Shown: positions 2,566 to 21,689 of the stretch, one piece after another
How positions within the stretch are numbered: position 1 is the first letter of the stretch
How the letters are laid out: every line of letters begins with the position of its first letter
Virus record (IMG/VR): IMGVR_UViG_3300028654_000001
Span: 62,001 to 126,000 of that record
DNA: 64,000 bases
Reading direction: 5' to 3' (one strand)
The notes under the pieces: generated by a model
What the model was told of the DNA's origin: nothing
The model's input: only the letters and a program-made list of their open reading frames with translations
Databases searched by the model: none
Translations under genes and position numbers: made by a program

Positions 2566-2770
2566 CGATCCCCCTCAAGATCCGCTCAAACCTAGTAGGT
2601 GGGCTGTAGCGTGGGCACGTCGTCTTATGGGTGACATACTTATGATTACCATCCTCCTGTCGACAGTCTCCAAGCTGATCTCCTCTATCAGGGCGTAGGA
2701 ACAGCAAGTTTCTATGGGTGAACTTGGTGCACCCATTACAAAGACTAGGTTCGTTCGGGTCTTCATCCAT
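2552..2770 (-). CDS. Small Cys-rich protein with PTRFERIL tag
   Basis: CNGC...C...C, ends SPPTRFERILRGIVGAI; start taken at MDEDP. Confidence 0.75.
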   Translation of the reverse strand: MDEDPNEPSLCNGCTKFTHRNLLFLRPDRGDQLGDCRQEDGNHKYVTHKTTCPRYSPPTRFERILRGIVGAI

Positions 2771-2954
2771 CTTGAAGGATCCTTTCAAACCGAGTAGGCC
2801 TATACAGTGGGAGGTGTCTCTTGCATTCTGTTAGGAAGTCACCCTTGTAAGTCTGATCACTGAACCTAGCACCACAGGGAAAATGCCCATCTGGAACCTT
2901 CTTGGTTAGATAAGTACAATCGGAACAGGGGTTGCGATCTCGATTCGGAGGCAT
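2763..2954 (-). CDS. Small Cys-rich protein with PTRFERIL tag
   Basis: In-frame ATG at 2954 (MPPNRDRNPCSDC), ends YRPTRFERILQDG. Confidence 0.7.
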   Translation of the reverse strand: MPPNRDRNPCSDCTYLTKKVPDGHFPCGARFSDQTYKGDFLTECKRHLPLYRPTRFERILQDG

Positions 2955-2973
2955 CTTTCTCTGGCGTGGGAAC

Positions 2974-3231
2974 TCACGCATCTGCTGGCCGGATGTCCCC
3001 GGTGATAACGAGGTCAACTTCGAAGCCCTCGAACTCAGTCGGTATCTTGGGGCTCCTTGGCTTGTGGTGGAGCAGGATGTGAATGGTTGGGTGGGTCCGA
3101 GCCCCGTTGACCCCAACCCCCACGCCCGTTAGAGCGAAGCCTTGATCCTTGAGCTTCTGATGCAGCTTCTTACCCGCTCTCTTGCAATCAAGGAAAGCTG
3201 GGGAGTCCTCGGTAAGTATTGGCTTAGTCAT
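2974..3231 (-). CDS. Hypothetical protein
   Basis: 85-aa ORF; GGTATA motif 12 nt upstream of the ATG. Confidence 0.6.
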   Translation of the reverse strand: MTKPILTEDSPAFLDCKRAGKKLHQKLKDQGFALTGVGVGVNGARTHPTIHILLHHKPRSPKIPTEFEGFEVDLVITGDIRPADA

Positions 3232-3273
3232 CTAGGCGCACTATATACCACAGATGGTGTATACTTGGGAAGT

Positions 3274-3633
3274 ATGGCCGACAATGACATCGAATCCTTC
3301 TGGGATGGGCTACGACCGCCTCCACTGCCCCCTGAGGAGCAGAGACAGAAAGCCATTGAAACAGGGCTGTGTCGAGCTCGGGAGGAAGCGTTAAACCATC
3401 CTCACTGGGCCGTCTCCTGGAGGAACCCGGGTGAACCAGGGTCGGGGCCGCTCACTGACCTTGTCCGAGCTTTCACCGAGCTGGGGCTATCCGTCGACAC
3501 CCATTTCGAGTTCGATAGATCCGTTCTGTCCCTCGTCATTGGAGACCAGACCATCCACCTAGAAACAACCGATGGACAGACCCGTGTCAGAGTATTCGAT
3601 CTACTGCCAGACACACAAATTGTGATTGCCTGA
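3274..3633 (+). CDS. DIESxW-family protein
   Basis: ATG 3274 gives MADNDIESFWDGLRPP, matching the ORFs at 16618 and 20913; GGTGTA 12 nt upstream. Confidence 0.75.
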   Translation: MADNDIESFWDGLRPPPLPPEEQRQKAIETGLCRAREEALNHPHWAVSWRNPGEPGSGPLTDLVRAFTELGLSVDTHFEFDRSVLSLVIGDQTIHLETTDGQTRVRVFDLLPDTQIVIA

Positions 3634-3685
3634 TAAGCTTCAAGATGTCCCGCGGAGGTTGCCGAGTATCTGGCGTCTTAGAAAC

Positions 3686-4666
3686 CTAGTGTGGAATCTT
3701 TGAACACAGGCGAGCAGAGAACTGTTGGCCCGTCTCTTTGGCGAAGATTGCTTTGAGCTTTGCCACTTCTGCCCAGGCGAGCTGAATCCTCTCCCTGGTT
3801 GCATCTAAGTTGTATCTGTCAGTCCTGCCAGATGGGGTACTCCGGAGCCTCACCAGTTCTTGTTGTGACAACTTGATATCTTCGAGATCACCGCAAATAT
3901 TGGGGACGCTGTCGGTCACCGCCTCTGCACGAGCCCGATCGTGCATACACTTACGGCTGGCCCTGCAGGTGCTCTCTTTGGCCGCTAAGACCTTTATTTG
4001 TGCTTCAATGTCTTCGACATCCTTGGTGGCCCTTGTGAGATACTCTGGGTCACAAGATGAATCTTTGAGAACTTGTCGAACCTTGGCATCAGCCTCTACC
4101 CATCGTGTATCACTCAACTTTTCCGAGTTGAGGAAGTACTCCTCATTGAACATCCTCAACCACGAGAGATTGTATTCAACCGTTCGGACCTCTAAATAGA
4201 CCTTTCCGCGATCGGTCTTGATGACCAATTCTCTGTTCTCTTTAAGCAAGTCTACCAGCTCTTGTAGCAGAGGGCTTTTTAGCTCCTCTGCCATTTGAGG
4301 ATGATCCTTAGCGCCCTTCTTTAGATCATTCACCATACTCGATAAGATCTTTCCAAGCTCATCCACCTTTTTCTGTTGTGCTGTGAGATCACTACAGGTG
4401 GCCACCCGAAGAGACTTTGGTTTTAATCCGAACTCCTCCTTCCAGTGTTGTAAGAGTGCTTGCAACTTGTCCTGGTGACTGCGAGATGTATCGACCTGTT
4501 GCTGCATTTCGTCGTCCGTTGGAGGTTTGCTTGTCGGCTGCCTTGTGGTTGAACTTGAACCCGATGCAGTTTGCTGCACCTCTGAGGCCAGACTAGGTAG
4601 AGCCCGTGAGATCCAGGCCAGTAGAATGACCAACAGGATCAGAGTTTTTTGGAGTCTGAAGAACAT
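3686..4666 (-). CDS. Exported or membrane-anchored coiled-coil protein
   Basis: N-terminal hydrophobic signal (TLILLVILLAWISRA), helical body. Confidence 0.65.
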   Translation of the reverse strand: MFFRLQKTLILLVILLAWISRALPSLASEVQQTASGSSSTTRQPTSKPPTDDEMQQQVDTSRSHQDKLQALLQHWKEEFGLKPKSLRVATCSDLTAQQKKVDELGKILSSMVNDLKKGAKDHPQMAEELKSPLLQELVDLLKENRELVIKTDRGKVYLEVRTVEYNLSWLRMFNEEYFLNSEKLSDTRWVEADAKVRQVLKDSSCDPEYLTRATKDVEDIEAQIKVLAAKESTCRASRKCMHDRARAEAVTDSVPNICGDLEDIKLSQQELVRLRSTPSGRTDRYNLDATRERIQLAWAEVAKLKAIFAKETGQQFSARLCSKIPH

Positions 4667-4734
4667 GGCATTACCCCTTATTGAAGACTACGGATTTACT
4701 AGCTGAATTCTATTGAGTCCCTTGAATCCAGGAG

Positions 4735-4980
4735 CTAGACTCTTCTGCCTGTCTCGATTACCCTGACCATTTCCGAGGGTACCCCGATCGACTTCAACCA
4801 CTCAAGAGCGTAGCCCTTTCGAGTCTCTACTCTGAACGCAGGTCCGTAATCATCGTTAGGACTCTCGGCCTGAAGCTCAGGAAATGGAGTAGACCCTTCA
4901 AACTTGATCTCTACCAAGTCGGTTCCGCTTCCAGTAATTACCACTACAGAAGTAATCGAAACGTTGAGTTTAGTTGCCAT
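4735..4980 (-). CDS. Hypothetical protein (MATKLNV...)
   Basis: ATG 4 nt after a class-1 promoter hexamer. Confidence 0.7.
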   Translation of the reverse strand: MATKLNVSITSVVVITGSGTDLVEIKFEGSTPFPELQAESPNDDYGPAFRVETRKGYALEWLKSIGVPSEMVRVIETGRRV

Positions 4981-5013
4981 ACCAATACTACGTTCGAGGG
5001 GGCAGGATCTCAC
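4981..5013 (-). promoter_or_regulatory. Class-1 promoter GTGAGA-N17-TAGTAT
   Basis: One of about 20 copies of the motif. Confidence 0.7.
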
Positions 5014-5041
5014 CAAATTAGTGATAACTGCCCCACCCTTG

Positions 5042-5359
5042 TCACTCGACCTCACTCAGGAGTTCGCTCAGGTCCTGAAGATCAAACCAGATCTCACTCA
5101 GACCATTACTATGACCACGATCCCAAGCCTTCTCCCACAGAAGATCTGCCTTGGGGTGCTTGTACTTCTGATTCCCCTTCGAATCAACCTTCAGTAGTTT
5201 CAATTCTACCAGGGCATCAACCTTGAACTGCCCCTCGAGCCTAGCAATGTCGGCTCGGTATGCAGTATTTACTGCCAAGTCCTGCTTCCTATTCTTGAAT
5301 GGCAGGGTGGTCTTGTAATAACCCTCTTGAAGCTTTTCTGATACTCTCTTGTTTTCCAT
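5042..5359 (-). CDS. Phage hypothetical protein (HPKADLLWEKAWDRGHS)
   Basis: 105-aa ORF directly after a class-1 promoter. Confidence 0.75.
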   Translation of the reverse strand: MENKRVSEKLQEGYYKTTLPFKNRKQDLAVNTAYRADIARLEGQFKVDALVELKLLKVDSKGNQKYKHPKADLLWEKAWDRGHSNGLSEIWFDLQDLSELLSEVE

Positions 5360-5393
5360 GTCAAGTATTACGCTTGAGGGGGCAGGATCTCAC
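5360..5393 (-). promoter_or_regulatory. Class-1 promoter GTGAGA-N17-TAATAC
   Basis: Near-identical to 4981-5013. Confidence 0.7.
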
Positions 5394-5807
5394 CAAACTT
5401 GAAGGTTTTAGAGGTTCCGGAGGAGGTAGGCACTTGTAACAGGTCGGAATGACATAACACCGACGCCGTAACTCCACGACCCGTCCACATTGAACACAGA
5501 GGATTCTTGGATCAACCGGTGGTAGTTCCAGTACCTTCATTGGTCGAAGTCCTACTCTCAGACCGACATGGACAGGGACGCGTATGACCCCTAACATCAA
5601 AGTCACACCCAGAGCCCCCACACATCGGGCAGTCCCCACGACAAGAGCATGGCTCAACAAGTATGATCCCGTCCCCCCTCGTTGAGTGGGTCAGCACTGA
5701 ATCGCAATTAGAACACTTCAAGGTAACCATCAAGTAACACCCTCACGTTCAAATCAAATCTAGCCCAAGTGTCCCCTCGAGATCCAGAAGTTTCAGCCAG
5801 TACTTAC

Positions 5808-6821
5808 TTACCAGATTGGGAAAACCAGCATATTCCAAGGGTTGGCGAACGAGGTACTCGTTATTGGGGTTCCGGCTGTCCAAAGTCCAGTAACTATCGA
5901 GTAGCTGAGTGGTGTCACTGTATTATTATAGAAATCTGATGCTAGTGCGGTGTTACCAATCCCGTCATTGGCTATGGTAACCGATACAATAGCGTTGAAA
6001 CCAGTTATGGTTTGACCCGGGCTAAAAGTATTGGTGGCCGGGTCAAAGTTTACGGTACGGATGACTCCAGGCTCTCCCTCACCACCTCCACCAATTGCAG
6101 ATAGACCATCCGGACGCCAACATACACTCCGCAAAGTAACTGGTATTGAAACATGGTCCCAAGTAGTTCCATTCCAGATCAGACCATCCGATGGTAACCC
6201 TTGGTAACAACTACCAACAATGGCAGCATTACCAGAAGTAGAGATCCCGCTACAAAAGAACTTCTCAGTACTCCCACTAAGTGGAATGCCACTGCCGACA
6301 GACCAGATCCCTGTGCCAGGATCCCTGGCTAGTGGGTAGACATAAGGATCCCACTTAGGAACAGCTATCGCCCTAGATCCATCCCGAGTCATGCTCACTG
6401 AGTTGAAGTGTGCATCCGAAATACTAACTATAGGCTGAGCTTCCCAAAGACCTGACTCTGTGTTGAATTCATAAGGGGTAACCCCACCTGCGTAATCCCC
6501 TCCCGATAGTGCGTGCAACCCGTCATTGGACATTGCTACGGCATCACAATTTCCTCCACCCTGTGGAACGAGAGTCCCCGGTACCCAAGTAGTTCCGTTA
6601 TAGTCTAGTGGAACAACACCACCACCAGAGTAGTTGGCGTATAATACACGAGACCCTTGAATATTGGAGGCGAGCGAGGATAGGTTGTTAGTGGTTGGTC
6701 CTGCCGTGATAGCTCCAGCCACTACCCAACCACCAGTTCCTGAACCAATCAAGTGAGTTACTTGATTGGAACCGTAGTTTTCAACCAATGCATGGAGTGA
6801 GTACAAGAACTTACGGGGCAT
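5808..6821 (-). CDS. Beta-propeller virion/tail protein
   Basis: Repeated blades (VAMSNDG, VSMTRDG, CWRPDG) and W-x-x-G-x-x-I motifs; Gly/Thr/Ser rich. Confidence 0.6.
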   Translation of the reverse strand: MPRKFLYSLHALVENYGSNQVTHLIGSGTGGWVVAGAITAGPTTNNLSSLASNIQGSRVLYANYSGGGVVPLDYNGTTWVPGTLVPQGGGNCDAVAMSNDGLHALSGGDYAGGVTPYEFNTESGLWEAQPIVSISDAHFNSVSMTRDGSRAIAVPKWDPYVYPLARDPGTGIWSVGSGIPLSGSTEKFFCSGISTSGNAAIVGSCYQGLPSDGLIWNGTTWDHVSIPVTLRSVCWRPDGLSAIGGGGEGEPGVIRTVNFDPATNTFSPGQTITGFNAIVSVTIANDGIGNTALASDFYNNTVTPLSYSIVTGLWTAGTPITSTSFANPWNMLVFPIW

Positions 6822-6910
6822 AAAACCTAACTAGGCGAGCTATAAGCAAGTTATCCAACCTCACTTCCGATAGGTCTTGAGCTTCTAACCAGGGAACTCT
6901 ATTCTCCTAG

Positions 6911-9355
6911 TTAAACTGCAGCTGATACCTTGATCATAGCCCCGTTCGACCCAATACGAACAACAGTGGTCTTTCCTTGATCAAGCACAACCCCAGATCC
7001 AATGAACGGGTACTCGGTGAACTTGACTTGGAATGCCCCTGTTGTGTTGTTGTAGACTGCCCACTCAGCTCCAACCCAGGACGGACAATTGAGAAGTAGG
7101 TCACTATCTAGCACTCCTGTGACCTCTATTGATCTGCAGGTCATTTGAGAAGCTAATAACCCAAACGGACCCCCATGCCACGAAACGGTGGCCACCCCGC
7201 CTTGCTGCATAAAGATGATCTTTCCGGCCCCTGGCAGGAATGCCCCACCACTACAACCTGAGAAGTCACAGTTAGGTCCAACGATGATCGTTCCAGCATT
7301 TACCCACAACCCGTAAGCCCCACTGAATACAACGTTGTCGATGTAGAGAATACCTGCAGCATTATCAAGCTTGACGCAAATATCCCCAAGCCCCATCGCT
7401 ATACTGCCACCTGATAACTTGGTGACTCCTGTGCTACCGATTACGATACCAAGCCCATACGCCCCATTTGGCCTTAACAAGTCAAATCCAGTGATCACGT
7501 TAGGCCCTACTCCATTGAACACCCCAAATGAGTAAGCGTCATCCACCTCAGAGGTGTGCATCTTCCAACCATACACCTCGATTTCCCCAGCACATACAAT
7601 GCCATTCTTACAATCGTTGGTGTTTAGGCTGTAGCATTTAGTCCCCGTGACGTTAGCCCCAACATATACCCCTACTGGGGCTTTAACAAAGCTGCACGCA
7701 GTTAGTGTAGTGTCTGCTGTAATGTCTCCTGGGAAGTAGTCAATCAATGCACCATTCTGAAGTGCACCAATTGACGAGAAGTTGGAGATCTTGCTTCGAA
7801 TAGCACCAACTACCCACAAGCTAAATGCAGACCCGATATCCCCGCCACCTTCAATCGAGCAATCAATACTGCCAAAAGTCACCCCTGTAGAGAAGTCACC
7901 CGTAATCACATGTGCATAACCACAGCCGACTGTCCAATTGTTGATTGATCGGCAATTGTAACTATCCGTGAATCCACATCCCTGCTCAGTAAACCCAGTG
8001 AATCGACAATCGCGAATAACACATCGCTCAGTAGCCTGAGCATACATTCCAAAATATGCCAAACCACCAACATTATCATTGCGAGCTACGACGTTGACTA
8101 TCTCGGAGTCACGAGTACCGATATCTAGAGCACAAACTGTATGAACGGTTAGGTGTGGATCTGTTGCTCGATAGTGATAGTTGACATTCCTTAGTGAATA
8201 CCGGCGCCCCGCTGTAACCTCAAACTCCTGCCCGGCAGCCCCATACAGGTTACCCCCACGCATGTCGATATCAATGTCGTGCGGGGTATTGACATACAGG
8301 TCAATACTTGCCCCAATCGGTAACGGCCACACTACAGGACGATCGACTGCTATTGATAGGTTGGTTGCTGCTCCTGCAACTAGTCCAAGCAACGTGTTAG
8401 CAGTGCCAGATCCAACAACAATCGAAGTTACAGCTGATAGTGCTAGGTGATGGTTTGCTGCATCGTCAGTACAAAGGTTGAGAGCTGGCCATTTAGCGAG
8501 AATTGCCGCCAGAAAAGCCTTCTTCGTCGCAACATTTGTGGCCTTACTCAAGACCAGAGTTTGAGGCCCAGCACCATCAACATTCAGAATCAAGGTTAAC
8601 CCATCGAGAGTCGAGCTACCCCCATAGAGTGTTCCCGCTGAGATATCCGTCGTCCCTACGACAGCTTGACCTATGGAAATGACATCGTACATGCCACCAT
8701 TGTCTACAACACGTACAAACAACACCTCCCCCACAACTGGGGTTTGTACTAGAGGTACTGGTATGATAACGTTGCACACACTTTGTGTGACCGCTGTCCA
8801 CCCAAGTGGAGTTACATTGTCTGCGAGCGAGTAAAGGGCGTAATTCCCTACTTGATTAAACTTAATCTGTGTACCAGGGGCACAAGTGAGTCGAGTGTTA
8901 GACGGAATTGTACGACCACTAGAGCCTGCATCGAGAAGTTGGATCTCAGTAGTACCAGATAGTTGAAGCCCCTTTTGAGCATTAGTAGCTGCTACCAACG
9001 CATCCCTAAAGGCTAGCATATCATTGGATATACCGTCTATTGCGGTATAAGTGTTCCGTGAGATCTCGGTCTCAATCTCAGTTCGCATTTCATCGAGACT
9101 GCCACCGGTGAGAACTGCCACCACGACAGTTCCAGCTGCATGAGATGTTGCTGTAGTTCCTTCAACCCCTCTGGTAACCGTCCAAGTTGTGCCAGCAACT
9201 CCAGTGATCAGTATGAGCTCTTGGCCAACTCGAACTCGGAACTCTGGTTGGTTTGGAAAATGAGCTGCACTATCGACCGTGATCATCAAGTCCCCAAACC
9301 CCACCGGTGAAGACAAAGCTGTACTGGCCTGATTGACGAAGCGCTCGGTTGTCAC
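6911..9355 (-). CDS. Tailspike / tail-fibre-like protein with right-handed beta-helix
   Basis: Structural N-terminal module (TWTVTRGVEGTTATSHAAG), tailspike neck motif (DDxxAF-like NDMLAFRDA), pectate-lyase-like repeats. Confidence 0.7.
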   Translation of the reverse strand: MTTERFVNQASTALSSPVGFGDLMITVDSAAHFPNQPEFRVRVGQELILITGVAGTTWTVTRGVEGTTATSHAAGTVVVAVLTGGSLDEMRTEIETEISRNTYTAIDGISNDMLAFRDALVAATNAQKGLQLSGTTEIQLLDAGSSGRTIPSNTRLTCAPGTQIKFNQVGNYALYSLADNVTPLGWTAVTQSVCNVIIPVPLVQTPVVGEVLFVRVVDNGGMYDVISIGQAVVGTTDISAGTLYGGSSTLDGLTLILNVDGAGPQTLVLSKATNVATKKAFLAAILAKWPALNLCTDDAANHHLALSAVTSIVVGSGTANTLLGLVAGAATNLSIAVDRPVVWPLPIGASIDLYVNTPHDIDIDMRGGNLYGAAGQEFEVTAGRRYSLRNVNYHYRATDPHLTVHTVCALDIGTRDSEIVNVVARNDNVGGLAYFGMYAQATERCVIRDCRFTGFTEQGCGFTDSYNCRSINNWTVGCGYAHVITGDFSTGVTFGSIDCSIEGGGDIGSAFSLWVVGAIRSKISNFSSIGALQNGALIDYFPGDITADTTLTACSFVKAPVGVYVGANVTGTKCYSLNTNDCKNGIVCAGEIEVYGWKMHTSEVDDAYSFGVFNGVGPNVITGFDLLRPNGAYGLGIVIGSTGVTKLSGGSIAMGLGDICVKLDNAAGILYIDNVVFSGAYGLWVNAGTIIVGPNCDFSGCSGGAFLPGAGKIIFMQQGGVATVSWHGGPFGLLASQMTCRSIEVTGVLDSDLLLNCPSWVGAEWAVYNNTTGAFQVKFTEYPFIGSGVVLDQGKTTVVRIGSNGAMIKVSAAV

Positions 9356-9536
9356 ATCTGGGTAGACCTATAGAAGCTCTATTGACTGGTTTGGTCCCAA
9401 AATCTTTGCCGCTGTACCCAAACCCAGAACGCAGGTACTTTTCCGATCCGAACCGTCATTCAGATAAACAGGTCTCATCAAACGATGGATTCTTCGGGAT
9501 TAGTGGTCTCAATTGTACTCCATTGAGAGAAAGTTG

Positions 9537-9565
9537 GTGAGATCTGGGTCAGTCGAACGTAGTAT
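9537..9565 (+). promoter_or_regulatory. Class-1 promoter GTGAGA-N17-TAGTAT
   Basis: Motif match upstream of 9579. Confidence 0.6.
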
Positions 9566-9578
9566 AGTCAGGTAACCT

Positions 9579-11278: not shown

Positions 11279-11286
11279 GGTAGTTG

Positions 11287-11806: not shown

Positions 11807-12007
11807 CTAATCCTCCTTCGATAGGATCCTCTCGAATCGAGTCGGCCTCTCAAAAAAGTGCTCTGAGCACCCATCCATCTCGTGTAACTTCCAGCAAGTC
11901 TCATTGACCTGAGACAATGCCGTTCGCTTGCCATCCAACACAGGAATGAAAACCGACTCCCGAGTCCTGTACCGGTAGCAGTTGGAACAGGAACGAGATT
12001 CAGTCAC
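11807..12007 (-). CDS. Small Cys-rich protein with PTRFERIL tag
   Basis: CSNC...C...C, ends ERPTRFERILSKED. Confidence 0.75.
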   Translation of the reverse strand: MTESRSCSNCYRYRTRESVFIPVLDGKRTALSQVNETCWKLHEMDGCSEHFFERPTRFERILSKED

Positions 12008-14496: not shown

Positions 14497-15012
14497 CGCA
14501 GCCTGAGGCTACCCCAAAGAACTGAAAATTACAAGAGTCACCGGACATTTAGGACCTTTCCCAAAACTAGGGGTTGGTGGGGTCAGGTCCTCGAACCTCC
14601 CACACCAAACCCAGGGAAGGGTCCACCGGGTGGCTAGCTAATCAAAAAGTATTTTGGTGAGATCCGAGCCCCTCATCCGTAATACTGAGGGTGCTGCTCA
14701 AAAGCATATAACCCATGATGGGAGATAAGGGTCGGGGTACTCACCATGATAAAGCCACTGCCAATCAACCGTAGCCTCAGAGAAGTTGTATGGGAGACAC
14801 GGGACACCGTAACCATAGGACTCGGATCGAAGACTGCTGGTATTACAGTGAGGGATAGAAACCTTCGTACAGTACAGTGCCTGCTCACGGTTCAGTTGAT
14901 TGACTACCTGTTGGAGCAGCTATTAGTAGCACGGGCTCACTTGGTCACGAATAATACTCAAACCGGTCCGGCCATTCCAACTTTGGTCTCATTGACCGCC
15001 GTAAAGTAAACG

Positions 15013-15822: not shown

Positions 15823-15830
15823 GTCGTGGA

Positions 15831-16043
15831 TCAATCCTCTTCCTGGAGAATTCTCTCGAATCGCGTCGGGTATAGAGGCCTTGGATAGGGCAGGTATCTT
15901 AAACAACTCCTGATCTCTACGAACTCTAGGGGGCTGATTCTTTCCTCGCACCTTCGTTGCTTGAACTGACGCCCGTTGCCGGTGTCGACTAGCTCAAGCA
16001 CCCAGTGCTGGCAGTTGTCACAAGGGCAGGGAGGGTTTGGCAT
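15831..16043 (-). CDS. Small Cys-rich protein with PTRFERIL tag
   Basis: In-frame ATG 16043 (MPNPPCPCDNC), ends LYPTRFERILQEED. Confidence 0.75.
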   Translation of the reverse strand: MPNPPCPCDNCQHWVLELVDTGNGRQFKQRRCEERISPLEFVEIRSCLRYLPYPRPLYPTRFERILQEED

Positions 16044-16221
16044 CCTCATCCTCTTGAGGGAGTGGCTCTTGCCGGGGACCTCCGACGACTTGTTTAAACT
16101 CGAGAATGTAGGGACACTCTCGTATGATGAGAGTGTCAGTCCTCGGAGGAACAAGTCCCAAACTGCAAAGCTCTTCCTTCCACCGTTGACATCGATTACA
16201 AGGTCTCGGATCCTTTGGCAT
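16018..16221 (-). CDS. Small Cys-rich protein (same type, no tag)
   Basis: MPKDPRPCNRC...C...C; CTCTATGGTAG upstream, as at 20869. Confidence 0.65.
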   Translation of the reverse strand: MPKDPRPCNRCQRWKEELCSLGLVPPRTDTLIIRECPYILEFKQVVGGPRQEPLPQEDEDAKPSLPL

Positions 16222-16230
16222 CTGAGAAGG

Positions 16231-16262
16231 CTACCATAGAGAGCAGTTTCGGTGTAATGTCC
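16231..16262. promoter_or_regulatory. Conserved divergent-promoter cassette (second copy at 20876-20907)
   Basis: ctaccatagag-N9-ggtgta-n-tgtcc in both places. Confidence 0.6.
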
Positions 16263-16346
16263 TTTCATGTTGTGGACAATTATTGTATACGCCTTCGGTT
16301 GTTTAACTGGCTGGTATGTTCGTAAGATCTTGGAATAAGTGGCCTA

Positions 16347-16625
16347 ATGGTCGAAGATGAAGATGACATCGAGTCCTACTGGGAGGACATCCGGTTTTAC
16401 CCGCCGGAACCGGTGGACCCTATCATCAAGCTTCGAGCAGAGGAGCAGGCCAGGGAGGCCCTAGCCGAAGAGCTGGGTGAAGACGCCTACGACTTCCGGC
16501 ACCTTCCCTTCGAACGATTCCTCGAAGTCATGCGTTCCATTCGGGCTAGCCGGATGGAGTCAACCTTGATTCGAGACCTTCATGAGCGGCCTGGACCCCG
16601 AGACGGGATAACTAGACGTGGCTGA
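16347..16625 (+). CDS. DIESYW-family protein (short)
   Basis: MVEDEDDIESYWEDIRFYPP. Confidence 0.7.
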   Translation: MVEDEDDIESYWEDIRFYPPEPVDPIIKLRAEEQAREALAEELGEDAYDFRHLPFERFLEVMRSIRASRMESTLIRDLHERPGPRDGITRRG

Positions 16626-17160
16626 CGATGACATTGAATCCTACTGGGAAGGGATCAGACCCCCTCGAACTCCAGTTGGGGCTCGTAGAGAGTCTGGTCA
16701 CCTCACTACTTCTGGGGAGCAGTACCTGAGAAATCAACTAGCTGAAGTTGAAGAAAGGGCCTCTCTAATTAGAGACCAACTTCCGATCGAAGACCAGCAG
16801 CAAGGCTTAGTTCAAAATAGGTATGCTGATCGTCTCAGAGATCAGATAAACCAAGGACCCACCACTATACGGCAAGACCGCCTGGGGCGGCATCTGCAAT
16901 CCCATCTGGATAATCTCAGAAGACCGGGCTCCTTCGAGCATCCAACAGCCCCCGCTGTGCTACCAAGAACCCCCGAGGAGGACCTCTTCAACAATCTCAC
17001 CAATGCCCTCGCCGCTCTTGGGTTCCCTCCACAATCAATTAACCTCGAGAGTGACTTCGGTGAAGGCTTCTCCCTGACCATCACCATGTCCCCAAGCTAC
17101 GAATTCGAAACATCCTCTGACTCCGACGAGGTTTCCGTCACCTTCTCACATAGACACTAA
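16618..17160 (+). CDS. DIESYW-family protein
   Basis: MADDDIESYWEGIRPP; C-terminal LAALGFPPQSI...SLTITM. Confidence 0.8.
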   Translation: MADDDIESYWEGIRPPRTPVGARRESGHLTTSGEQYLRNQLAEVEERASLIRDQLPIEDQQQGLVQNRYADRLRDQINQGPTTIRQDRLGRHLQSHLDNLRRPGSFEHPTAPAVLPRTPEEDLFNNLTNALAALGFPPQSINLESDFGEGFSLTITMSPSYEFETSSDSDEVSVTFSHRH

Positions 17161-17169
17161 GTCAGGTTA

Positions 17170-18183
17170 TTATACTCCTAGTCCAGCTTCTCGCCACCGG
17201 AGCTTGAACTCCTGAATTAACTCAGCTCCACGCGTCCCCTCCTCAGCCCTGAATTCCTCTATCAGGTAGTGTTCCCCAGCTACATGAGTATAATCCTTTG
17301 GGTAAGCCCATCTACAACCACGACAAACATCAGGATCGTTGTTGTGGCACTTTGAACAAACATCTTCCTTATTTGTATTGTGGGAGGGGCACAGCAACAT
17401 TAGCGCCGATAACCCCTCTGCTCTGAAAACTGAGTTATCTACAATCCTCCAATGTATCCGGTGATCTCCTTGAAGGTTGTCAGTATCACCACAGAATTCG
17501 CACTTACCCCCATACATAGATATCAGAGCTTCCTTCTCTTTTCTACTAAGAGGGTACCTGCCTTCCCGAACCCTAGTAAACTTATCCGGGTCAAACTCAT
17601 ATCGAGTGGTCTGTCTACCATCAACAGTAAGGGATCTCCTTCGAAGAGGGATCCCATAATCCTCAAGTTCGTTGATCGCCCTCTCATCCCGTTCTTCCCG
17701 AACCTCTAAAGAAGTAACAAACCCCTTCTGTAGAATCAGATCACGAATGATGTTACACCTAGGATTGCGCTGTACTCTTCCAGTCTTGGGGGACCTCCTA
17801 GGGGCCAGAAGAGCATCAACAAAGGCTACGGAAGCCTCTGTCATGAGATCTTCTACTACAGTACGATTCGCCGAGGGTACCGCCGCCAAGATCCTTTCAA
17901 CTTGCTCGGATGCCTCAGGCCCGTAAATCCTCCCAATGGGCTCCACAGGAAAAGAACTCTCATCAATCTCCTCATCCCCATCAGGGAACTCAGAATCAAC
18001 TTTCGATCCCTTGCTGAAAAGATCCTTTAGGATCTCATCTTCGTCATCTGACATACTTGAGTACGCAGAAGTTGACCCCCCTTGACAACCATCACAGATA
18101 AACTTCAAGTCATCGGGTAAGCGATCCCCCTGAAGATAAGTCTTCCCACACACTTCACATGTTTTTTCAAAAGGTACAGGCAT
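17170..18183 (-). CDS. HNH endonuclease, KpnI-like restriction-enzyme family
   Basis: GIPL...DGR, CEFCG..LQGDHR, LMLLCPSHNTNK, CSKC..CRGCRWAYPKDYTHVA; N-terminal Zn ribbon. Confidence 0.7.
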   Translation of the reverse strand: MPVPFEKTCEVCGKTYLQGDRLPDDLKFICDGCQGGSTSAYSSMSDDEDEILKDLFSKGSKVDSEFPDGDEEIDESSFPVEPIGRIYGPEASEQVERILAAVPSANRTVVEDLMTEASVAFVDALLAPRRSPKTGRVQRNPRCNIIRDLILQKGFVTSLEVREERDERAINELEDYGIPLRRRSLTVDGRQTTRYEFDPDKFTRVREGRYPLSRKEKEALISMYGGKCEFCGDTDNLQGDHRIHWRIVDNSVFRAEGLSALMLLCPSHNTNKEDVCSKCHNNDPDVCRGCRWAYPKDYTHVAGEHYLIEEFRAEEGTRGAELIQEFKLRWREAGLGV

Positions 18184-18273
18184 TTAGAACTTCTCCTTAC
18201 TTCTGCTTGTGAGATTCAGATAGGTTGGGTGAAGTTGGAAGACACCAACTGATTCAAAGTAGCTCATGGGACC

Positions 18274-18313
18274 AAAAACCGCCGTTAGATGGGGCTTTTC
18301 AATCTAACGGCGG
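18274..18313 (-). terminator. Intrinsic terminator after the ParB-like gene
   Basis: 12-bp stem CCGCCGTTAGAT/ATCTAACGGCGG followed by T5 on the minus strand. Confidence 0.75.
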
Positions 18314-18332
18314 AAGTCAACAAACCCTCAGG

Positions 18333-19073
18333 TCAATTGATCCACTGGCTTGGATCGAAGTCCTTGCTCTGCCGAATCGAAGAGATGAACCTCCGAACCG
18401 AGTACACCCCCTTGGAACAAGTTTTCAACCATGCCTTGGCTTGAGCCTGACGTTTGGAGGATACCATGAGATACTCACCTATCTCCAGCAAGTCAGGACT
18501 CTCATCCTTCTTTTTAGAAGCTTGATTCGCCTTGATCAGAGTGTTTTCGAAAATCTCATGAAGGGCTTTGATCGTCTGCTGTATTGCCGGAGATGTTTTG
18601 CCTTTCCTCCCAATGTCAACAGCTCGAGTCTTGCCAAAAATAGTTACCATCCCACGAATGTGAGCCTCCAACGTCCGAGACCCTCTCCCAATCACCTTGA
18701 CATGATGATCCCTCTGACTAGCCGCGATCGTTGCCCAGGATTGAAAGTGATGCTCCGCAGTATAATGTACAGTCCCACTATTCAAAAGAGCTATCAAGTC
18801 CTCGGCCGCTAGCAAACTCTCCGCTACATAACAAAGAACTGAATCATACCCAAGAACCTCGGCTGCAGCCCGCCTCCGATGACCATCACAAATGATGTAC
18901 ATCCCAGGTTCATTAGCCCTAACTACCACCAAAGGACTAATAAGTTCACTCTCCTTAATCAACTGAGTCAGAGGCGTCTTCTCTGTAATACTCTTATGAC
19001 GCTGCTCCGGCTGAATGCTGTTAGCCAGTAACTTGCTCAACGGAATCTCGATTACCTCAGGCTTCTTTTTCAC
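18333..19073 (-). CDS. ParB/Srx N-terminal-domain protein
   Basis: IPLSKL..NSIQP, LISPLVV, YIICDGHRRRAAA. Confidence 0.8.
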   Translation of the reverse strand: MKKKPEVIEIPLSKLLANSIQPEQRHKSITEKTPLTQLIKESELISPLVVVRANEPGMYIICDGHRRRAAAEVLGYDSVLCYVAESLLAAEDLIALLNSGTVHYTAEHHFQSWATIAASQRDHHVKVIGRGSRTLEAHIRGMVTIFGKTRAVDIGRKGKTSPAIQQTIKALHEIFENTLIKANQASKKKDESPDLLEIGEYLMVSSKRQAQAKAWLKTCSKGVYSVRRFISSIRQSKDFDPSQWIN

Positions 19074-19557
19074 AGTTTACCTCGTATTGAAATGGCTTCG
19101 AAGAGCCGACCCTTTTGATTGTCTTGTTCGGTAGAAGAACGTTGTTGATGATCTGTTTCACAACCCGAACATCTGCCTCTAGGTAGCTTCCTAACTGCTC
19201 TGCTGTCCAAGCCGGGTGATCAATAAGAGTCAAACAAATAGACTCACCTGTCACAGGATCCGGAGGTACTGACCTAGGGGTCTTCACAGGTAACTTCCCA
19301 CCTGCCCCATTCGTAGGCTTCCCCAACTCAAGCCCCCTCTGAGTCCCTGCTGGCCTCCCAGGGGGCCTCTTCTGAATTGGTTCTGTAGATTCCATATCTA
19401 TGGTTCTACAAAGCGCAGTGCAAATCATAGTTACACATGCTTCGTGTCCAAGATTCCCAACCAGAATCTCCAAACACTCTTCTGAAGAATACTTGCGAAG
19501 AGGTTTCCCATCAACTGTGATATTAGGGAATGGTTTTCCTTGATGCTTGTCAATCAT
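19057..19557 (-). CDS. Putative DNA-binding protein (AT-hook-like plus winged HTH)
   Basis: KRPPGRP; WTAEQLGSYLEADVRVVKQII...KRVG..PFQY. Confidence 0.55.
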   Translation of the reverse strand: MIDKHQGKPFPNITVDGKPLRKYSSEECLEILVGNLGHEACVTMICTALCRTIDMESTEPIQKRPPGRPAGTQRGLELGKPTNGAGGKLPVKTPRSVPPDPVTGESICLTLIDHPAWTAEQLGSYLEADVRVVKQIINNVLLPNKTIKRVGSSKPFQYEVNCEKEA

Positions 19558-20460
19558 TGTTCAACCAAACCAAAGTACACCGAGACTTCCAAAGGGCCAC
19601 CCCGCAAAACCCCACTTTGGTCTCCACTGAACTTGATTCTGATTGGCAAGCTCTGAGTCGTTCTTCAGCTCAATTATCAGATCTCAAAAGTTATAGCCGC
19701 CCCAAGACAAAATTTGAAATCCGCCATGAGCCATCTAGGAGTCCCTTAAGGGGGGTGCCTAGCCCGCCCTGAGTCGGTCCAGAAAGAACCGCCACCGCCA
19801 TGAGCCATCTCTGGTCATGTCCACTCCGGTGTCTCGTCTCCGTGCCACCTGGACGCCCCTGCCAAGTTTGGTAGTTGTTACCCCGTCACCTAAATGTAGG
19901 TCGCTGACTAAATTAAGCCGGCCAACTAAACACCCCTAAACTTGCCCCGTCCTCTGCCCCTAGCCCCTGTCAGGTACAAGCCCAAGTTATTGCTTTTCCA
20001 GAAAAATTTGCCGCCGCAGGGAATTTTTTGCCCCTAGCCCCTTTTCAGGACAACTGGCAATGCCCCTACCCCGCTCCTGGGGTTTTTATGAGTCCAGAAA
20101 TACTAGGAACCATTGATTATTCTGGTAAAGTCCTACCGCGAAGCAGGTCGGGTTAAACCCGAAATACCTCACCGCCGCATAAAATGATCATGAGTACTAA
20201 ATACCCCAATTTAGGCAAGAACCGGTCAGTCGGAATGATAACCAAGCGAATTTCCATTATATTGGATCCAACACACATCTTCGTGTGTGTTTTACTTCAC
20301 ATCTCATCATCACACACCTAATACACACTAAAAGACTACACAACACACAGTTAGTACACAGATAGTGAGTAAATATGTGGGTCATGTGTGTGCACCCTAG
20401 GGTTACTGGCCAGCTACTGTGCTAGACAAGAGCCATGCCAAGTACCCTCTATAATAAATG

Positions 20461-20494
20461 GTGAGATAGTAGGGCCTCATGTGTAGTACTGAGC
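20461..20494 (+). promoter_or_regulatory. Class-1 promoter
   Basis: GTGAGA-N17-TAGTAC-TGAGC-ATG. Confidence 0.7.
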
Positions 20495-20698
20495 ATGGAA
20501 CACGTTCGATTCAGCCAAGACCAGAAACGAATCATCGTCCTGAATAACCAATATGCTCAGTGCGGGATCAACTACGACAAGGACACTCGGCGCATCGTAG
20601 AGCAAGACATACACACGAGGCCTACCCTCAAGGCCATCCCCATTGAGTACGAAGAGTACCGCCTGCAGACGGTCTCTCTAGGACCCCTCTTCACGTAG
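20495..20698 (+). CDS. Hypothetical protein, paralog of 24876..25067
   Basis: YAQCGINYDKDTRR vs YAQFGVSCDKATRR. Confidence 0.7.
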   Translation: MEHVRFSQDQKRIIVLNNQYAQCGINYDKDTRRIVEQDIHTRPTLKAIPIEYEEYRLQTVSLGPLFT

Positions 20699-20869
20699 GA
20701 TACGTTCGAACCGTGTGGGGTACAGCCGCAGAAGTGGCAGTTGTACAGGACACACATCAGTACCTAGGAGACAGGGAGGAGTAACTCCCTTTGAGCACTC
20801 CCAGTACCTCCGTACCATCAACGAGTGCTGACAGTCATCACAGGGGTAGGGCTGGTCAGGCATCGCCAA
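20678..20869 (-). CDS. Small Cys-rich protein with PTRFERIL tag
   Basis: PCDDC...C...C, ends LYPTRFERILREEGS. Confidence 0.75.
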   Translation of the reverse strand: MAMPDQPYPCDDCQHSLMVRRYWECSKGVTPPCLLGTDVCPVQLPLLRLYPTRFERILREEGS

Positions 20870-20912
20870 AGAACCCTACCATAGAGGGCCTTCTTGGTGT
20901 ACTGTCCATCCA

Positions 20913-21689
20913 ATGGCCGACGAGATCGAAGACTATTGGGAGGGGATTAGACCCCCTCGAGAGCCGGTTCCCCAGGCCTCGGACTGGCATAGGTTCTTCC
21001 CAGAGGGGCCGCCTAGTGCCGAACTCCCCTTCGGTATAACTCAGGACCTCCTAGCTAGGAACCGGGGTATCATTGAAGTAGTTCGTCAAGGACTCTACTC
21101 AGAGCTGGGTCGTGACCCTACTACAGATGAGATAATCACCGGACTAATCCCAGAGTTGGTATTTAGAGGGAGACTTCTGCAGCTGTACCCAGATCCTGGG
21201 CGGGATTTTGCACCTATTCGCCAGACACTCAGCACTCATCTGGGACGTGAGCCTAACATTCAAGAGATCCAAGACGCTTACAATAAAGAGGCCATCAGAA
21301 CCCTTAGCCAGTATAACCCCGTCCCCGAGACCCAAGAAGAGCTTGAGGCCTTACGGCCCGAGACACCCGCCGGTGAATCTCTTGGTAATAGGGTTGATCC
21401 AACCCATGCAGATATTCACCAAGCCCTTATAGATGGCTTGGGTCGAGATCCAACCATCCAAGAGATGAGTGAGGCCTACTCCTACCTAACCCGAGGGTTC
21501 AACCTCACCGAGCACCTCCTGAACCGGATCACCCATGACCTCGGGGCTCTTGGCTTCCCACCAGAGTCAATCACCATTGACCGGTCCATCGAAGGTGATG
21601 CACAGAGCCTGACCATCCACATGCCAAGGACCCAGCAAACCCAACTCACTGGACCTGGACACAGTAGCGTCACATTCCATAGATCATAG
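20913..21689 (+). CDS. DIESYW-family protein with three LGR(D/E)Pxx(D/Q)E repeats
   Basis: MADEIEDYWEGIRPP; LGRDPTTDEI, LGREPNIQEI, LGRDPTIQEM; C-terminal LGALGFPPESI. Confidence 0.8.
   Translation: MADEIEDYWEGIRPPREPVPQASDWHRFFPEGPPSAELPFGITQDLLARNRGIIEVVRQGLYSELGRDPTTDEIITGLIPELVFRGRLLQLYPDPGRDFAPIRQTLSTHLGREPNIQEIQDAYNKEAIRTLSQYNPVPETQEELEALRPETPAGESLGNRVDPTHADIHQALIDGLGRDPTIQEMSEAYSYLTRGFNLTEHLLNRITHDLGALGFPPESITIDRSIEGDAQSLTIHMPRTQQTQLTGPGHSSVTFHRS

What the first reader, a model, noticed from the sequence alone, without database searches (positions are those of the whole stretch)
2763..21689. Recurrent divergent module: Cys-rich tagged gene(s) back-to-back with a DIESYW-family gene
Seen three times (about 3.2, 16.2 and 20.9 kb): small CxxC proteins bearing PTRFERIL point left and a protein starting MADxxIExxWxGxRPP points right. 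The 16231 and 20876 spacers share ctaccatagag-N9-ggtgta-n-tgtcc. The right-hand proteins keep an N-terminal acidic-Trp motif and a C-terminal L..LG(FPP) domain around unrelated middles. A fifth, divergent N-terminus is at 43896. Inference: an N-terminal tag that complements the C-terminal one, or co-regulated partner pairs (effector/inhibitor).
Basis: partly seen in the sequence, partly recalled or inferred. Interest (0 to 1): 0.65.

Follow-up and report, generated by a model that had tools for sequence, protein, structure and literature searches.

The report
Two terminal address tags, huge phage
A 512-kb soil phage puts one of two short, near-invariant peptide tags (one at the start, one at the end of the protein) on about 75 to 85 otherwise unrelated small proteins, which looks like an undescribed protein-addressing system, and the flagged "module" is a four-times duplicated gene pair that carries one tag of each kind.

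Summary
The window is part of a complete 512,571-bp huge phage related to Bacillus phage G, from rhizosphere metagenomes.

- **C-tag.** Genome-wide, 56-61 proteins end in (P)TRFER followed by IL-x-acidic or by E-[D/E/P]-V-I-stop.
- **N-tag.** 19-26 proteins begin M-x(1-6)-D-D-I-E-S-Y-W-E-G-I-R-P-x-R. No protein carries both tags at its two ends.
- **Level of selection.** Synonymous codons vary freely inside the tag, so selection is on the peptide.
- **Carriers.** They belong to many unrelated families.
- **Distribution.** Both tags occur together in two related phage contigs. Both are absent from three relatives, one of them with 84% capsid-protein identity.

The flagged module is a duplicated cassette. 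It consists of Cys4 (CxxC…C…C) C-tagged gene(s) diverging from an N-tagged gene with a small C-terminal alpha+beta domain. There are four copies in this genome, three of them in the window. Divergent N/C neighbours number 5, against 0.4-0.7 expected.

Part of the shared spacer motif (GGTGTA) is a genome-wide start-proximal signal and is not specific to the module.

My best reading is that the tags are disordered docking or sorting peptides read by a common receptor, perhaps for loading into the procapsid. Direct tag-tag docking remains possible, and the one co-fold I ran gave no answer.

The parts
2112..2318 (-). Cys4 (CxxC..C..C) small protein, 68 aa. It ends in STRFERLLKDQP (C-tag, IL type).
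2311..2565 (-). Cys4 small protein, 84 aa. It ends in RPTRFERILKDNG.
2552..2788 (-). Cys4 small protein, 78 aa. It ends in PPTRFERILRGIVGAI.
2763..3116 (-). Cys4 protein that ends in RPTRFERILQDG. The longest ORF is 117 aa, and the likely start is further in, near 2981. It is the left arm of the 3.2-kb module.
3274..3633 (+). N-tagged protein, 119 aa (MADNDIESFWDGLRPPP...), with the C-terminal alpha+beta 'ALG' domain. It is the right arm of the 3.2-kb module.
11807..12007 (-). Solitary Cys4 C-tagged protein, 66 aa (…ERPTRFERILSKED).
15831..16268 (-). Cys4 C-tagged protein (…LYPTRFERILQEED). Its probable start is near 16049. It is the left arm of the 16.2-kb module.
16018..16221 (-). Overlapping-frame Cys4 paralogue whose tag has decayed (…ECPYILEFKQVV…).
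   Evidence: read directly from the sequence
16231..16262 (.). Shared 32-nt spacer element CTACCATAGAG-N9-GGTGTA-N-TGTCC. GGTGTA is the genome-wide start-proximal motif.
16347..16625 (+). N-tagged protein, 92 aa (MVEDEDDIESYWEDIRFYPPEP…). It lacks the ALG domain.
16618..17160 (+). N-tagged protein, 180 aa (MADDDIESYWEGIRPPRTP…), with the C-terminal ALG domain. This is the protein that was modelled.
20678..20869 (-). Cys4 C-tagged protein, 61-63 aa (…LYPTRFERILREEGS). It is the left arm of the 20.9-kb module.
20876..20907 (.). Second copy of the 32-nt spacer element. It ends 5 nt before the N-tagged gene's ATG and lies 6-12 nt from the Cys4 gene's start.
20913..21689 (+). N-tagged protein, 258 aa (MADEIEDYWEGIRPPREP…). 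The middle holds three HNH-associated helix repeats, and the C-terminus is the ALG domain.
43477..43896 (-). Divergent N-tagged protein, 139 aa (MTPLDDLDDFWKVVRPNRLPPEP). It belongs to an unrelated family.
29760..30588 (-). Two overlapping C-tagged paralogues (29760-30233 and 30169-30588; …ERPTRFERILDSDV and …ILGPDV).
39154..42836 (-). Run of five C-tagged genes interspersed with untagged ones: 39154-39936, 39937-40440, 40437-40808, 41716-42099 and 42372-42836.
44422..44742 (-). C-tagged protein, 106 aa (…LTRFERVTREE).
45402..47506 (+). Four C-tagged genes of the E-x-V-I-stop type (45402-45788, 45999-46574, 46598-47134, 47144-47506), with one untagged gene between them.
50474..50950 (-). C-tag-bearing protein with a longer acidic tail after the tag (…RPTRFERLLEIDEEPS…).

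Best explanation
SHOWN
- The window belongs to a complete 512-kb phage G-like huge phage.
- Two short peptide motifs are used as terminal tags.
- The C-tag is (R/P)-P-T-R-F-E-R followed either by I-L-x-D/E… or by E-[D/E/P]-V-I at the very end. It occurs on 56-61 proteins.
- The N-tag is M-x(1-6)-D-D-I-E-[S/E]-[Y/F]-W-[E/D]-x-[I/V/L]-R-P-x-R-x-P. It occurs on 19-26 proteins.
- Together the tagged proteins make up about 11-12% of the proteome, and nearly all lie in the accessory arm from 0 to 245 kb.
- Selection acts on the peptide, not on the DNA.
- The tags sit on unrelated domains and are set off by Pro/Glu-rich linkers.
- AlphaFold2 models the tags as low-confidence short helices, so they look like linear motifs rather than parts of a fold.
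- The two tags are gained or lost together across relatives.
- The flagged module is one expanded cassette: one to four Cys4 zinc-ribbon-like C-tagged genes diverging from an N-tagged gene of a single paralogue family (N-tag, variable middle, small alpha+beta C-terminal domain).
- The spacer between the two arms carries the phage's general start-proximal GGTGTA signal. There are four copies of the cassette in this genome.

INFERRED
- The tags are docking or sorting peptides read in trans by a common receptor that is specific to this phage clade or to its host. They would address a large and fast-changing set of accessory proteins to one place or one machine.
- These accessory proteins include relatives of anti-defence proteins.
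- My favoured destination is the assembling procapsid, so that the cargo is injected with the DNA. This is what T4 does with its N-terminal capsid targeting sequence on diverse internal proteins, and what HK97-fold shells do with C-terminal targeting peptides. I hold this sub-claim at about 0.3.
- The divergent pairing probably reflects co-regulated duplication of a two-gene unit. It is not a general rule for the tags.
For: Genome identity
- The record is a virus with terminal repeats and is 100% complete.
- The capsid protein matches phage G (38%), Tunturi_5 (48%) and LR745208.1 (84%).
- The head module holds capsid protein, protease, portal and terminase.

Tags
- Counts and positions.
- 54 of 63 TRFER-like matches lie within 14 aa of a stop.
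- All Arg, Phe and Glu codons are used within the tag.
- The carriers fall into many separate paralogue clusters.
- The few family hits are disparate: a Tad2-like domain, a truncated UvsX/RecA-like protein, an Ig-like 'head decoration' domain, DUF7448 and HNH repeats.
- Pro is 11% before the C-tag and 19% after the N-tag, against 5.4% overall.
- pLDDT is below 60 at the tags.

Co-occurrence of the two tags
- TRFER pattern: G001 43 hits and G002 26, controls 0-1. LR745208.1, Tunturi_5 and phage G have 0.
- N-tag pattern: 13 and 6 against 0, 0 and 0.
- HMM scan of LR745208.1: nothing.
- Tandem C-tag plus N-tag-like motif conserved in g227143 and its G002 orthologue.

Module
- Neighbour statistics. 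Cys4 alignment. N-family alignments. GGTGTA motif.

Capsid lead (weak)
- Two C-tagged proteins contain segments 48-56% identical to pieces of the major capsid protein.
- One has an Ig-like domain of head-decoration type.
- C-tagged genes also sit in a satellite-like island of a bacterial MAG, next to a VapE-like primase and a sigma factor shared with the phage.
Against: - No receptor was identified.
- No virion proteome exists for this uncultured phage.
- A sister phage whose capsid protein is 84% identical has no tags at all. The capsid protein itself is therefore unlikely to be the receptor.
- The N-tag-like W-E-D-I-R in the prohead protease is also present in that tagless relative, so it is not a tag.
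- Tagged genes lie in the accessory arm, not near the head module.
- Only 3 of about 80 tagged proteins show any capsid-related domain.
- The excess of N/C neighbours and the conserved tandem motif fit direct tag-tag binding as well as they fit a common receptor.
Confidence: 0.55

Rival explanations
1. The N-tag and the C-tag bind each other directly. They would act like the matched C-terminal and N-terminal docking peptides of multi-subunit PKS/NRPS enzymes, so that any N-tagged protein can pair with C-tagged proteins. On this reading the flagged modules encode cognate partners.
For: - N/C neighbours are in excess: 8 against 3.0-4.4 expected, and divergent pairs 5 against 0.4-0.7.
- In all three co-directional neighbour pairs the N-tagged gene is upstream of the C-tagged gene, once with a 4-nt overlap.
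- The two motifs lie side by side in one conserved protein, a Rosetta-stone type of hint.
- The two tags are present together or absent together across genomes.
- The charge order is complementary: the N-tag runs acidic then basic, the C-tag basic then acidic.
Against: - The numbers are unequal in every genome: 61/24, 47/10 and 31/9.
- In G001 none of 10 N-tagged genes has a C-tagged neighbour.
- The bacterial islands carry C-tags only.
- AlphaFold2 does not pack the two motifs together in the natural tandem; pLDDT is below 50 there.
- The co-fold gave no answer, which counts neither for nor against.
Confidence: 0.2
2. The tags are degrons, that is, terminal signals read by a host AAA+ protease or adaptor. 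They would give early accessory proteins a short, timed life.
For: - The location is terminal, in disordered context, on many unrelated small proteins of the accessory arm.
- One subtype must end exactly at E-x-V-I-COOH: 63 of 139 tags have exactly 4 residues after TRFER. This suggests that the free carboxylate is read.
- Bacterial ClpX substrates are known to use both N- and C-terminal motif classes (established knowledge, not tested here).
Against: - The motifs are longer and far more invariant than known bacterial degrons and match none of them (from memory).
- The phage encodes no ClpP, PDZ or S41 protease.
- The C-tag also occurs internally in conserved proteins, including a kinase-like one.
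- It is hard to see why 11-12% of a proteome would be built for destruction.
Confidence: 0.12
3. The modules are effector/inhibitor (toxin-antitoxin-like) pairs, and the motifs are merely family signatures.
For: - The pairs are small, recurrent and fast-evolving, and they lie in an accessory region rich in anti-defence genes.
Against: - The genes are divergent, not co-transcribed.
- Neither partner matches a toxin or antitoxin family.
- The same motifs sit on dozens of unpaired proteins from unrelated families.
- One to four Cys4 genes face a single N-tagged gene.
Confidence: 0.05
4. The motifs reflect a nucleic-acid signal (terminator, ribosome-binding site for the next gene, recombination linker), or chance.
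For: - Codons for F-E-R often read GAGAGG, which is Shine-Dalgarno-like.
Against: - Every synonymous codon is used at each tag position.
- Many tagged genes are last in their transcription unit.
- The motif is tied to the reading frame and to the distance from the stop or start codon.
- The reverse-pattern controls give 0-1 hits.
Confidence: 0.02

Closest known systems
Capsid targeting sequence (CTS) of T-even phage internal proteins (IPI, IPII, IPIII and their variable relatives)
   Same: - A short conserved terminal peptide is the only thing shared by a diverse, fast-evolving set of small accessory proteins, several of them anti-defence (PMC3012670).
- The genes lie in variable regions.
- The N-tag here is likewise about 15 residues at the extreme N-terminus.
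   Different: - The sequence is unrelated.
- There are two tags here, and the commoner one is C-terminal.
- About 80 carriers here, against a handful in T4.
- No T4-type protease cleavage site is recognisable after the tag.
- Virion location is not shown.
C-terminal targeting peptides of HK97-fold shells (encapsulin cargo-loading peptides; C-terminal tail of the HK97 prohead protease)
   Same: - A short C-terminal peptide after a flexible linker, on unrelated cargo.
- The shell here has a phage G-type major head protein, which I take to be HK97-fold from general knowledge of tailed phages.
   Different: - The consensus is unrelated to the encapsulin type (as I recall it).
- A sister phage with an 84% identical capsid protein lacks the tags, so a capsid-protein pocket is unlikely to be the receptor.
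Peroxisomal PTS1/PTS2, and the N- or C-terminal encapsulation peptides of bacterial microcompartments
   Same: - One destination is served by two signal classes: a common one at the extreme C-terminus and a rarer one near the N-terminus.
- The ratio of C to N carriers is about 3:1.
   Different: - The kinship is purely logical.
- No compartment is known for this phage: a phiKZ nuclear-shell homologue and tubulin were not found.
- No receptor is known.
Docking (COM) domains of NRPS/PKS subunits
   Same: - Matched short peptides at the C-terminus of one protein and the N-terminus of another.
- Fused versions exist.
   Different: - The numbers of partners are unequal, and no pair-specific code is visible.
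- The carriers are not enzymes of one pathway.

Membership tests
T4-type capsid targeting sequence | A conserved peptide of about 10-15 aa at the extreme N-terminus of otherwise unrelated small proteins | tested here: met
   N-tag on 19-26 proteins, with W at residues 7-14. The carriers fall in different clusters.
T4-type capsid targeting sequence | The peptide ends at a prohead-protease site (L/I-x-E in T4) and is removed on maturation | not testable with these tools
   A head maturation protease is encoded, but its specificity is unknown. No T4-like site follows the tag.
T4-type capsid targeting sequence | Carriers are found inside virions and bind the scaffolding core | not testable with these tools
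   The phage is uncultured. The only indirect hints are capsid-protein fragments and an Ig-like domain in three carriers.
Encapsulin / HK97 C-terminal cargo-loading peptide | A short conserved peptide at the C-terminus after a flexible linker, on unrelated cargo | tested here: met
   C-tag on 56-61 proteins, with a Pro/Glu-rich stretch before it and low pLDDT.
Encapsulin / HK97 C-terminal cargo-loading peptide | The peptide binds a pocket of the shell protein and co-varies with it | tested here: not met
   LR745208.1 has an 84% identical capsid protein but no tag at all.
NRPS/PKS-like docking pairs | The C-terminal peptide of one protein binds the N-terminal peptide of its partner | tested here: inconclusive
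   The co-fold of the 20.9-kb pair gave no answer. There is an excess of neighbours and a tandem fusion, but the counts are unequal.
Toxin-antitoxin pair | A co-transcribed two-gene operon with a recognisable toxin or antitoxin fold | tested here: not met
   The genes are divergent. No Pfam or PHROG toxin or antitoxin family was hit.
Terminal degron (ssrA / ClpX motif classes) | A match to a known degron class, and a cognate protease | tested here: inconclusive
   The phage has no ClpP, PDZ or S41 protease. Host proteases could not be tested. The sequence resembles no class I know.
Cys4 zinc ribbon (left-arm proteins) | Four Cys as CxxC…C…C with conserved spacing in a small domain | tested here: met
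   15 paralogues follow CxxC-x(6-42)-C-x(6-30)-C, with the last Cys 3-15 residues (mostly 8-10) before the tag. Metal binding was not tested and there is no Pfam match.
Phage nucleus (chimallin) import cargo | The phage encodes a nuclear shell protein and PhuZ tubulin | tested here: not met
   The phiKZ gp54 query and Pfam Tubulin found nothing in the genome. The gp54 search used a single sequence, so a distant homologue is not excluded.

The most novel reading that the evidence does not exclude
A clade of rhizosphere huge phages runs its own protein-addressing system with two signal classes, one at the extreme C-terminus and one at the N-terminus. The logic would resemble PTS1/PTS2. The system would send a tenth of the proteome, mostly orphan and anti-defence-type proteins, to one phage-specified destination: the procapsid for co-injection, or an unknown intracellular structure. 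Satellite-like elements in the host genome would have copied the C-terminal signal to ride on the same machinery.
Probability: 0.35. Interest if true: 0.85.

Novelty: new variant of a known kind. Interest (0 to 1): 0.7.

Why it matters
If the tags are addresses, they mark about 80 proteins of unknown function in one phage, and about 140 C-tagged and 43 N-tagged proteins across three genomes, as sharing one fate. That turns a mass of orphan genes into a defined cargo set.

It would also provide portable 9-15-residue tags for loading foreign proteins into, or recruiting them within, huge-phage infections.

The clean presence/absence split between sister phages gives a handle for finding the receptor. 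The C-tagged genes on a satellite-like island in a deltaproteobacterial MAG give a second handle, and they also point to the host.

A full-text search found no paper that mentions these motifs.

Tried and rejected
- **Co-fold.** I folded the 20.9-kb pair (258-aa N-tagged plus 61-aa Cys4 C-tagged). The verdict was no answer, ipSAE 0.00, and the controls were not run. This is not evidence either way.
- **Fold search.** The model of the 180-aa N-tagged protein gave a best Z of 5.3 and only generic matches, so there is no functional lead for the C-terminal domain.
- **Natural tandem protein.** In the AlphaFold2 model of g227143 the tags have pLDDT below 50 and show no mutual packing.
- **Protease N-terminus.** The prohead protease has QAVWEDIR near its N-terminus, which could have been an N-tag. 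I rejected this because the tagless relative LR745208.1 keeps W-D-N-I-R at the same place.
- **Receptor hunt by conservation.** The proteins most conserved between this phage and G002 and missing from LR745208.1 turned out to be metabolic or anti-defence enzymes: NAMPT, adenylosuccinate synthetase, OMP decarboxylase, a macro domain, a CCA-adding enzyme and an Acb1-like protein. No candidate receptor emerged.
- **Family searches in the phage.** PDZ, ClpP, S41 protease, tubulin, phiKZ shell protein and Terminase_6N all found nothing.
- **Homologue search.** The 180-aa protein found only itself and one 313-aa metagenomic relative with the same ends. The DNA of that relative's contig could not be fetched.
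- **ESM Atlas.** The look-up of a Cys4 protein returned only unnamed viral clusters.
- **Equivalent tag in LR745208.1.** A de novo search for a different terminal motif found none at a comparable count.
- **First alignment.** The alignment of all 19 N-tagged proteins was too diverse for the locus scan.
- **Not run.** Read laying was not used, because no RNA run holds the region.

Full report
**What the sequence is**

The window is bases 62,001-126,000 of a single 512,571-bp virus record with direct terminal repeats, rated complete. GC content is 49%. The record has no 16S gene. It carries 41 tRNAs, a suppressor-type tRNA(CTA) and a tmRNA, all clustered at 458-499 kb.

The head module lies at 403-418 kb. 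It encodes:
- a 289-aa major head protein
- a decoration-like protein
- a 556-aa maturation protease
- the portal
- the large terminase

The capsid protein is 84% identical to that of the uncultured 485-kb phage LR745208.1. It is 48% identical to that of Tunturiibacter phage Tunturi_5 and 38% to that of Bacillus phage G. The DNA is held by rhizosphere metagenomes. This is therefore a phage G-like huge phage from soil.

**Check of the observation**

- At 3.2 kb, four tandem leftward genes (2112-3116) each have a CxxC…C…C pattern and a tail of the type PTRFERIL. They diverge from 3274-3633, which begins MADNDIESFWDGLRPP.
- At 16.2 kb, a leftward Cys-rich gene ending in YPTRFERILQEED diverges from two rightward genes. 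These begin MVEDEDDIESYWEDIR (16347) and MADDDIESYWEGIRPPR (16618).
- At 20.9 kb, the leftward gene 20678-20869 (…YPTRFERILREEGS) diverges from 20913-21689 (MADEIEDYWEGIRPPR).
- The minus-strand gene 43477-43896 begins MTPLDDLDDFWKVVRPNR.

The 32-nt spacer pattern matches exactly twice in the window and in none of 100 shuffles.

The right-hand proteins share a C-terminal segment (…ALAALGFPP.SI…SLTI.M…VTF). AlphaFold2 models it as one helix plus three strands at pLDDT about 80, while the variable middles are poorly predicted.

**The motifs are genome-wide terminal tags**

Six-frame scans of the whole genome gave these counts:
- 56 proteins (61 with a looser pattern) have [T/S]-R-F-[E/D]-R lying 2-14 residues from the stop.
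- 19 proteins have [D/E]-x-[F/Y/W]-W-x-x-[I/V/L/M]-R within 14 residues of the start. The count rises to 24-26 with looser patterns and a small HMM.
- No protein has one tag at each end.

Of 63 TRFER-like matches in all ORFs of at least 40 aa, 54 are within 14 residues of a stop. Position alone would give about 23%.

Pooling this genome with two related contigs gives 139 C-tags and 43 N-tags.
- C-tag consensus: (R/P)-P-T-R-F-E-R, then either I-L-x-D/E… (70 cases) or E-[D/E/P]-V-I-stop (52 cases). 63 tags have exactly four residues after TRFER.
- N-tag consensus: M-x-D-D-I-E-[S/E]-[Y/F]-W-[E/D]-[G/D]-[I/V/L]-R-P-x-R-x-P.

Inside the C-tag all Arg codons (CGN and AGR), both Phe codons and both Glu codons are used. 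What is conserved is therefore the peptide and not a DNA or RNA signal.

**The carriers**

The tagged proteins are small. The median is 133 aa for C-tagged and 162 aa for N-tagged proteins. 71 of 75 lie in the accessory arm at 0-245 kb. An all-against-all comparison puts them in many separate clusters.

Only a few match known families:
- a Tad2-like domain
- a truncated paralogue of the phage's UvsX-like recombinase
- an Ig-like domain of head-decoration type
- DUF7448
- HNH-associated repeats

The residues next to the tags are rich in Pro and Glu. In two AlphaFold2 models the tags are short helices with pLDDT below 60. These are the marks of short linear motifs on flexible ends.

**The two tags form one system, and it is narrow**

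- An IMG/VR-wide scan for PTRFERE[D/E/P]VI found only eight contigs, from four metagenomes.
- G001 (228 kb) and G002 (145 kb) have 43 and 26 TRFER patterns and 13 and 6 N-tag patterns. Reverse-pattern controls give 0-1.
- LR745208.1, Tunturi_5 and phage G have none of either tag. An HMM scan and a de novo search of LR745208.1 also found nothing.
- Orthologues in G002 keep the tags. Tag identity is 91-95% against 64-67% for the rest of the protein; the pairs were chosen by tag, so this is an upper view.
- One 191-aa protein, g227143, and its G002 orthologue hold both motifs in tandem inside the chain: RPTRFER[I/L]LR[E/D]NEIWEDYRP.
- A kinase-like protein has GPRTRFDHILEDDDDD near its N-terminus, conserved in G002.

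**A bacterial context**

A scan of one genome per prokaryotic species found the E-x-V-I-type tag in an ~8-Mb MAG labelled as an uncultured deltaproteobacterium. The tags there sit in two islands.

One island holds three C-tagged small genes next to a VapE-like primase. It also has a sigma-like gene that is 40-49% identical to a phage gene at 483.4-484.2 kb. Outside the islands, the pattern is at background level in that genome.

I read this island as a satellite-like or prophage-derived element. It suggests the host lineage. It also shows that the tag is a property of the mobile elements and not of host proteins.

**What the module is**

With tagged genes forced into a simple gene call of 711 genes, N-tagged and C-tagged genes are direct neighbours 8 times, against 3.0-4.4 expected. 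They are divergent 5 times, against 0.4-0.7 expected (p about 0.001).

Four of the five divergent pairs have the same layout and the same families.
- The left arm holds one to four genes of a Cys4 family with conserved spacing, which has 15 members in the genome.
- The right arm holds a gene of the family N-tag / variable middle / alpha+beta domain.

The module is thus an expanded two-gene cassette. In G001 none of 10 N-tagged genes has a C-tagged neighbour. In G002 the two such pairs are orthologues of pairs in this genome.

In the spacers, GGTGTA lies 10-12 nt before the ATG of the right-hand gene. The same hexamer sits 9-13 nt upstream of about 75 start codons across the genome, an 18-fold enrichment, and often as an inverted pair in divergent spacers. 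It is therefore a general expression signal. The remainder of the 32-nt match is best explained as shared ancestry of two cassette copies.

**How it most likely works**

A short, invariant, flexible terminal peptide on dozens of unrelated proteins is how cells and viruses address cargo to a receptor.

The closest precedent in phages is the T4 capsid targeting sequence. [quoted passage not shown] HK97-fold shells use C-terminal peptides for the same purpose (my knowledge; not tested here).

I therefore favour a common receptor and, with less weight, the procapsid as the destination.

Three hints point to the capsid:
- two C-tagged proteins carry 48-56% identical pieces of the capsid protein
- one C-tagged protein has an Ig-like head-decoration domain
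- the satellite-like island carries C-tags

Three points count against it:
- the tagless sister phage has a nearly identical capsid protein
- the tagged genes are far from the head module
- a seeming N-tag in the protease is not specific to tag-bearing phages

A phage nucleus is unlikely, because no shell protein or tubulin was found.

**Rivals**

- *Direct docking of N-tag to C-tag.* This fits the neighbour excess, the fixed N-then-C order of the three co-directional pairs, the tandem fusion and the mirrored charge pattern. It does not fit the roughly 3:1 numbers or the C-only islands. The single co-fold allowed returned no answer.
- *Degron.* This fits the strict E-x-V-I-COOH subtype. The phage encodes no ClpP, PDZ or S41 protease, and the motifs are unusually long and invariant for degrons.
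- *Toxin-antitoxin-like pairs, or nucleic-acid signals.* I consider both unlikely.

**Novelty**

Terminal targeting peptides are a known kind of device. This pair of motifs, their scale (about 11-12% of a phage proteome), their joint presence and absence across relatives, and their reuse on a bacterial island appear to be undescribed. A full-text search for the motif strings found nothing relevant.

Noticed in passing
window 51690-54370 and 62280-63990; cas genes 55353-61905: The phage encodes a CRISPR-Cas locus with three arrays: 29, 7 and at least 24 repeats of 36-37 nt, all starting GTTTCAATGAACG. They flank genes that look like cas3, cas7, cas8c and cas5 of type I-C. I saw no cas1 or cas2. 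The cas calls are by eye and were not scanned against families.
   Followed up: partly
genome-wide; e.g. window 3250-3262, 16251-16256, 20896-20901: GGTGTA lies 9-13 nt upstream of about 75 start codons, an 18-fold enrichment. It often forms an inverted pair, TACACC…GGTGTA, in divergent spacers. It is either a promoter element for near-leaderless transcripts or an unusual ribosome-binding signal.
   Followed up: partly
genome 220848-221597, 222714-223754, 462580-463089, 133474-133821 (outside the window): Four accessory proteins contain segments 41-56% identical to different pieces of the 289-aa major capsid protein: residues 1-62, 245-289 plus 85-137, 159-228, and 9-46. Two of the four carry the C-tag, and both are conserved in G002.
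   Followed up: partly
genome 227143-227718 (L012:11596-12168) and G002 27566-28138: A conserved protein carries the C-tag followed directly by an N-tag-like motif inside the chain: RPTRFER[IL]LR[ED]NEIWEDYRP. The motifs also occur internally in g246657 and in the kinase-like g240283.
   Followed up: yes
L104 (G003:C27:138000-157999) and L105 (G003:C40:229000-247000): An ~8-Mb MAG, labelled as an uncultured deltaproteobacterium, has two islands of small genes ending in TRFERE[D/E/P]VI. One island also holds a VapE-like primase, a possible prim-pol gene and a sigma-like gene that is 40-49% identical to a phage gene. FRG and Ymh-type genes lie next to it. This looks like a satellite-like element and gives a clue to the host.
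   Followed up: partly
window 16018-16221 (-) and 16267-16338 (+): An overlapping-frame Cys4 paralogue has a decayed tag (…ECPYILEFKQVV…). A 23-aa hydrophobic mini-ORF (MLWTIIVYAFGCLTGWYVRKILE) starts 10 nt after the spacer's GGTGTA.
   Followed up: no
genome 22318-23595, 59326-60663, 414860-415906, 418512-418904, 460734-461924: A third recurrent N-terminal motif, …L-[T/S]-L-R-V-A-A-R-[F/Y]…, occurs on several proteins, two of them in the head module. Some of these proteins have homologues in the tagless relative.
   Followed up: no
genome 457935-498674: There are 41 tRNAs, a tmRNA (tag VADLPRDSLGSG) and a tRNA with anticodon CTA, which is amber-suppressor type. ORFs in the window read normally under code 11.
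   Followed up: no
genome 10102-10578, 175779-176309, 229783-230343, 239139-245442: The phage has a rich anti-defence and NAD toolkit: a C-tagged Tad2-like protein, a macro domain, an Acb1-like 2H phosphoesterase, NAMPT plus an NMNAT-like cytidylyltransferase, an adenylosuccinate synthetase and a protein kinase.
   Followed up: partly
window 2-2110 and 6911-9355; genome 13138, 19699, 164453, 389275, 510316: Seven tail-fibre-like paralogues are scattered through the genome. At least two begin with a near-identical N-terminus: MTTERFVNQAST (window 6911-9355) and MTTERFSNQAST (the gene ending at window 2110).
   Followed up: no
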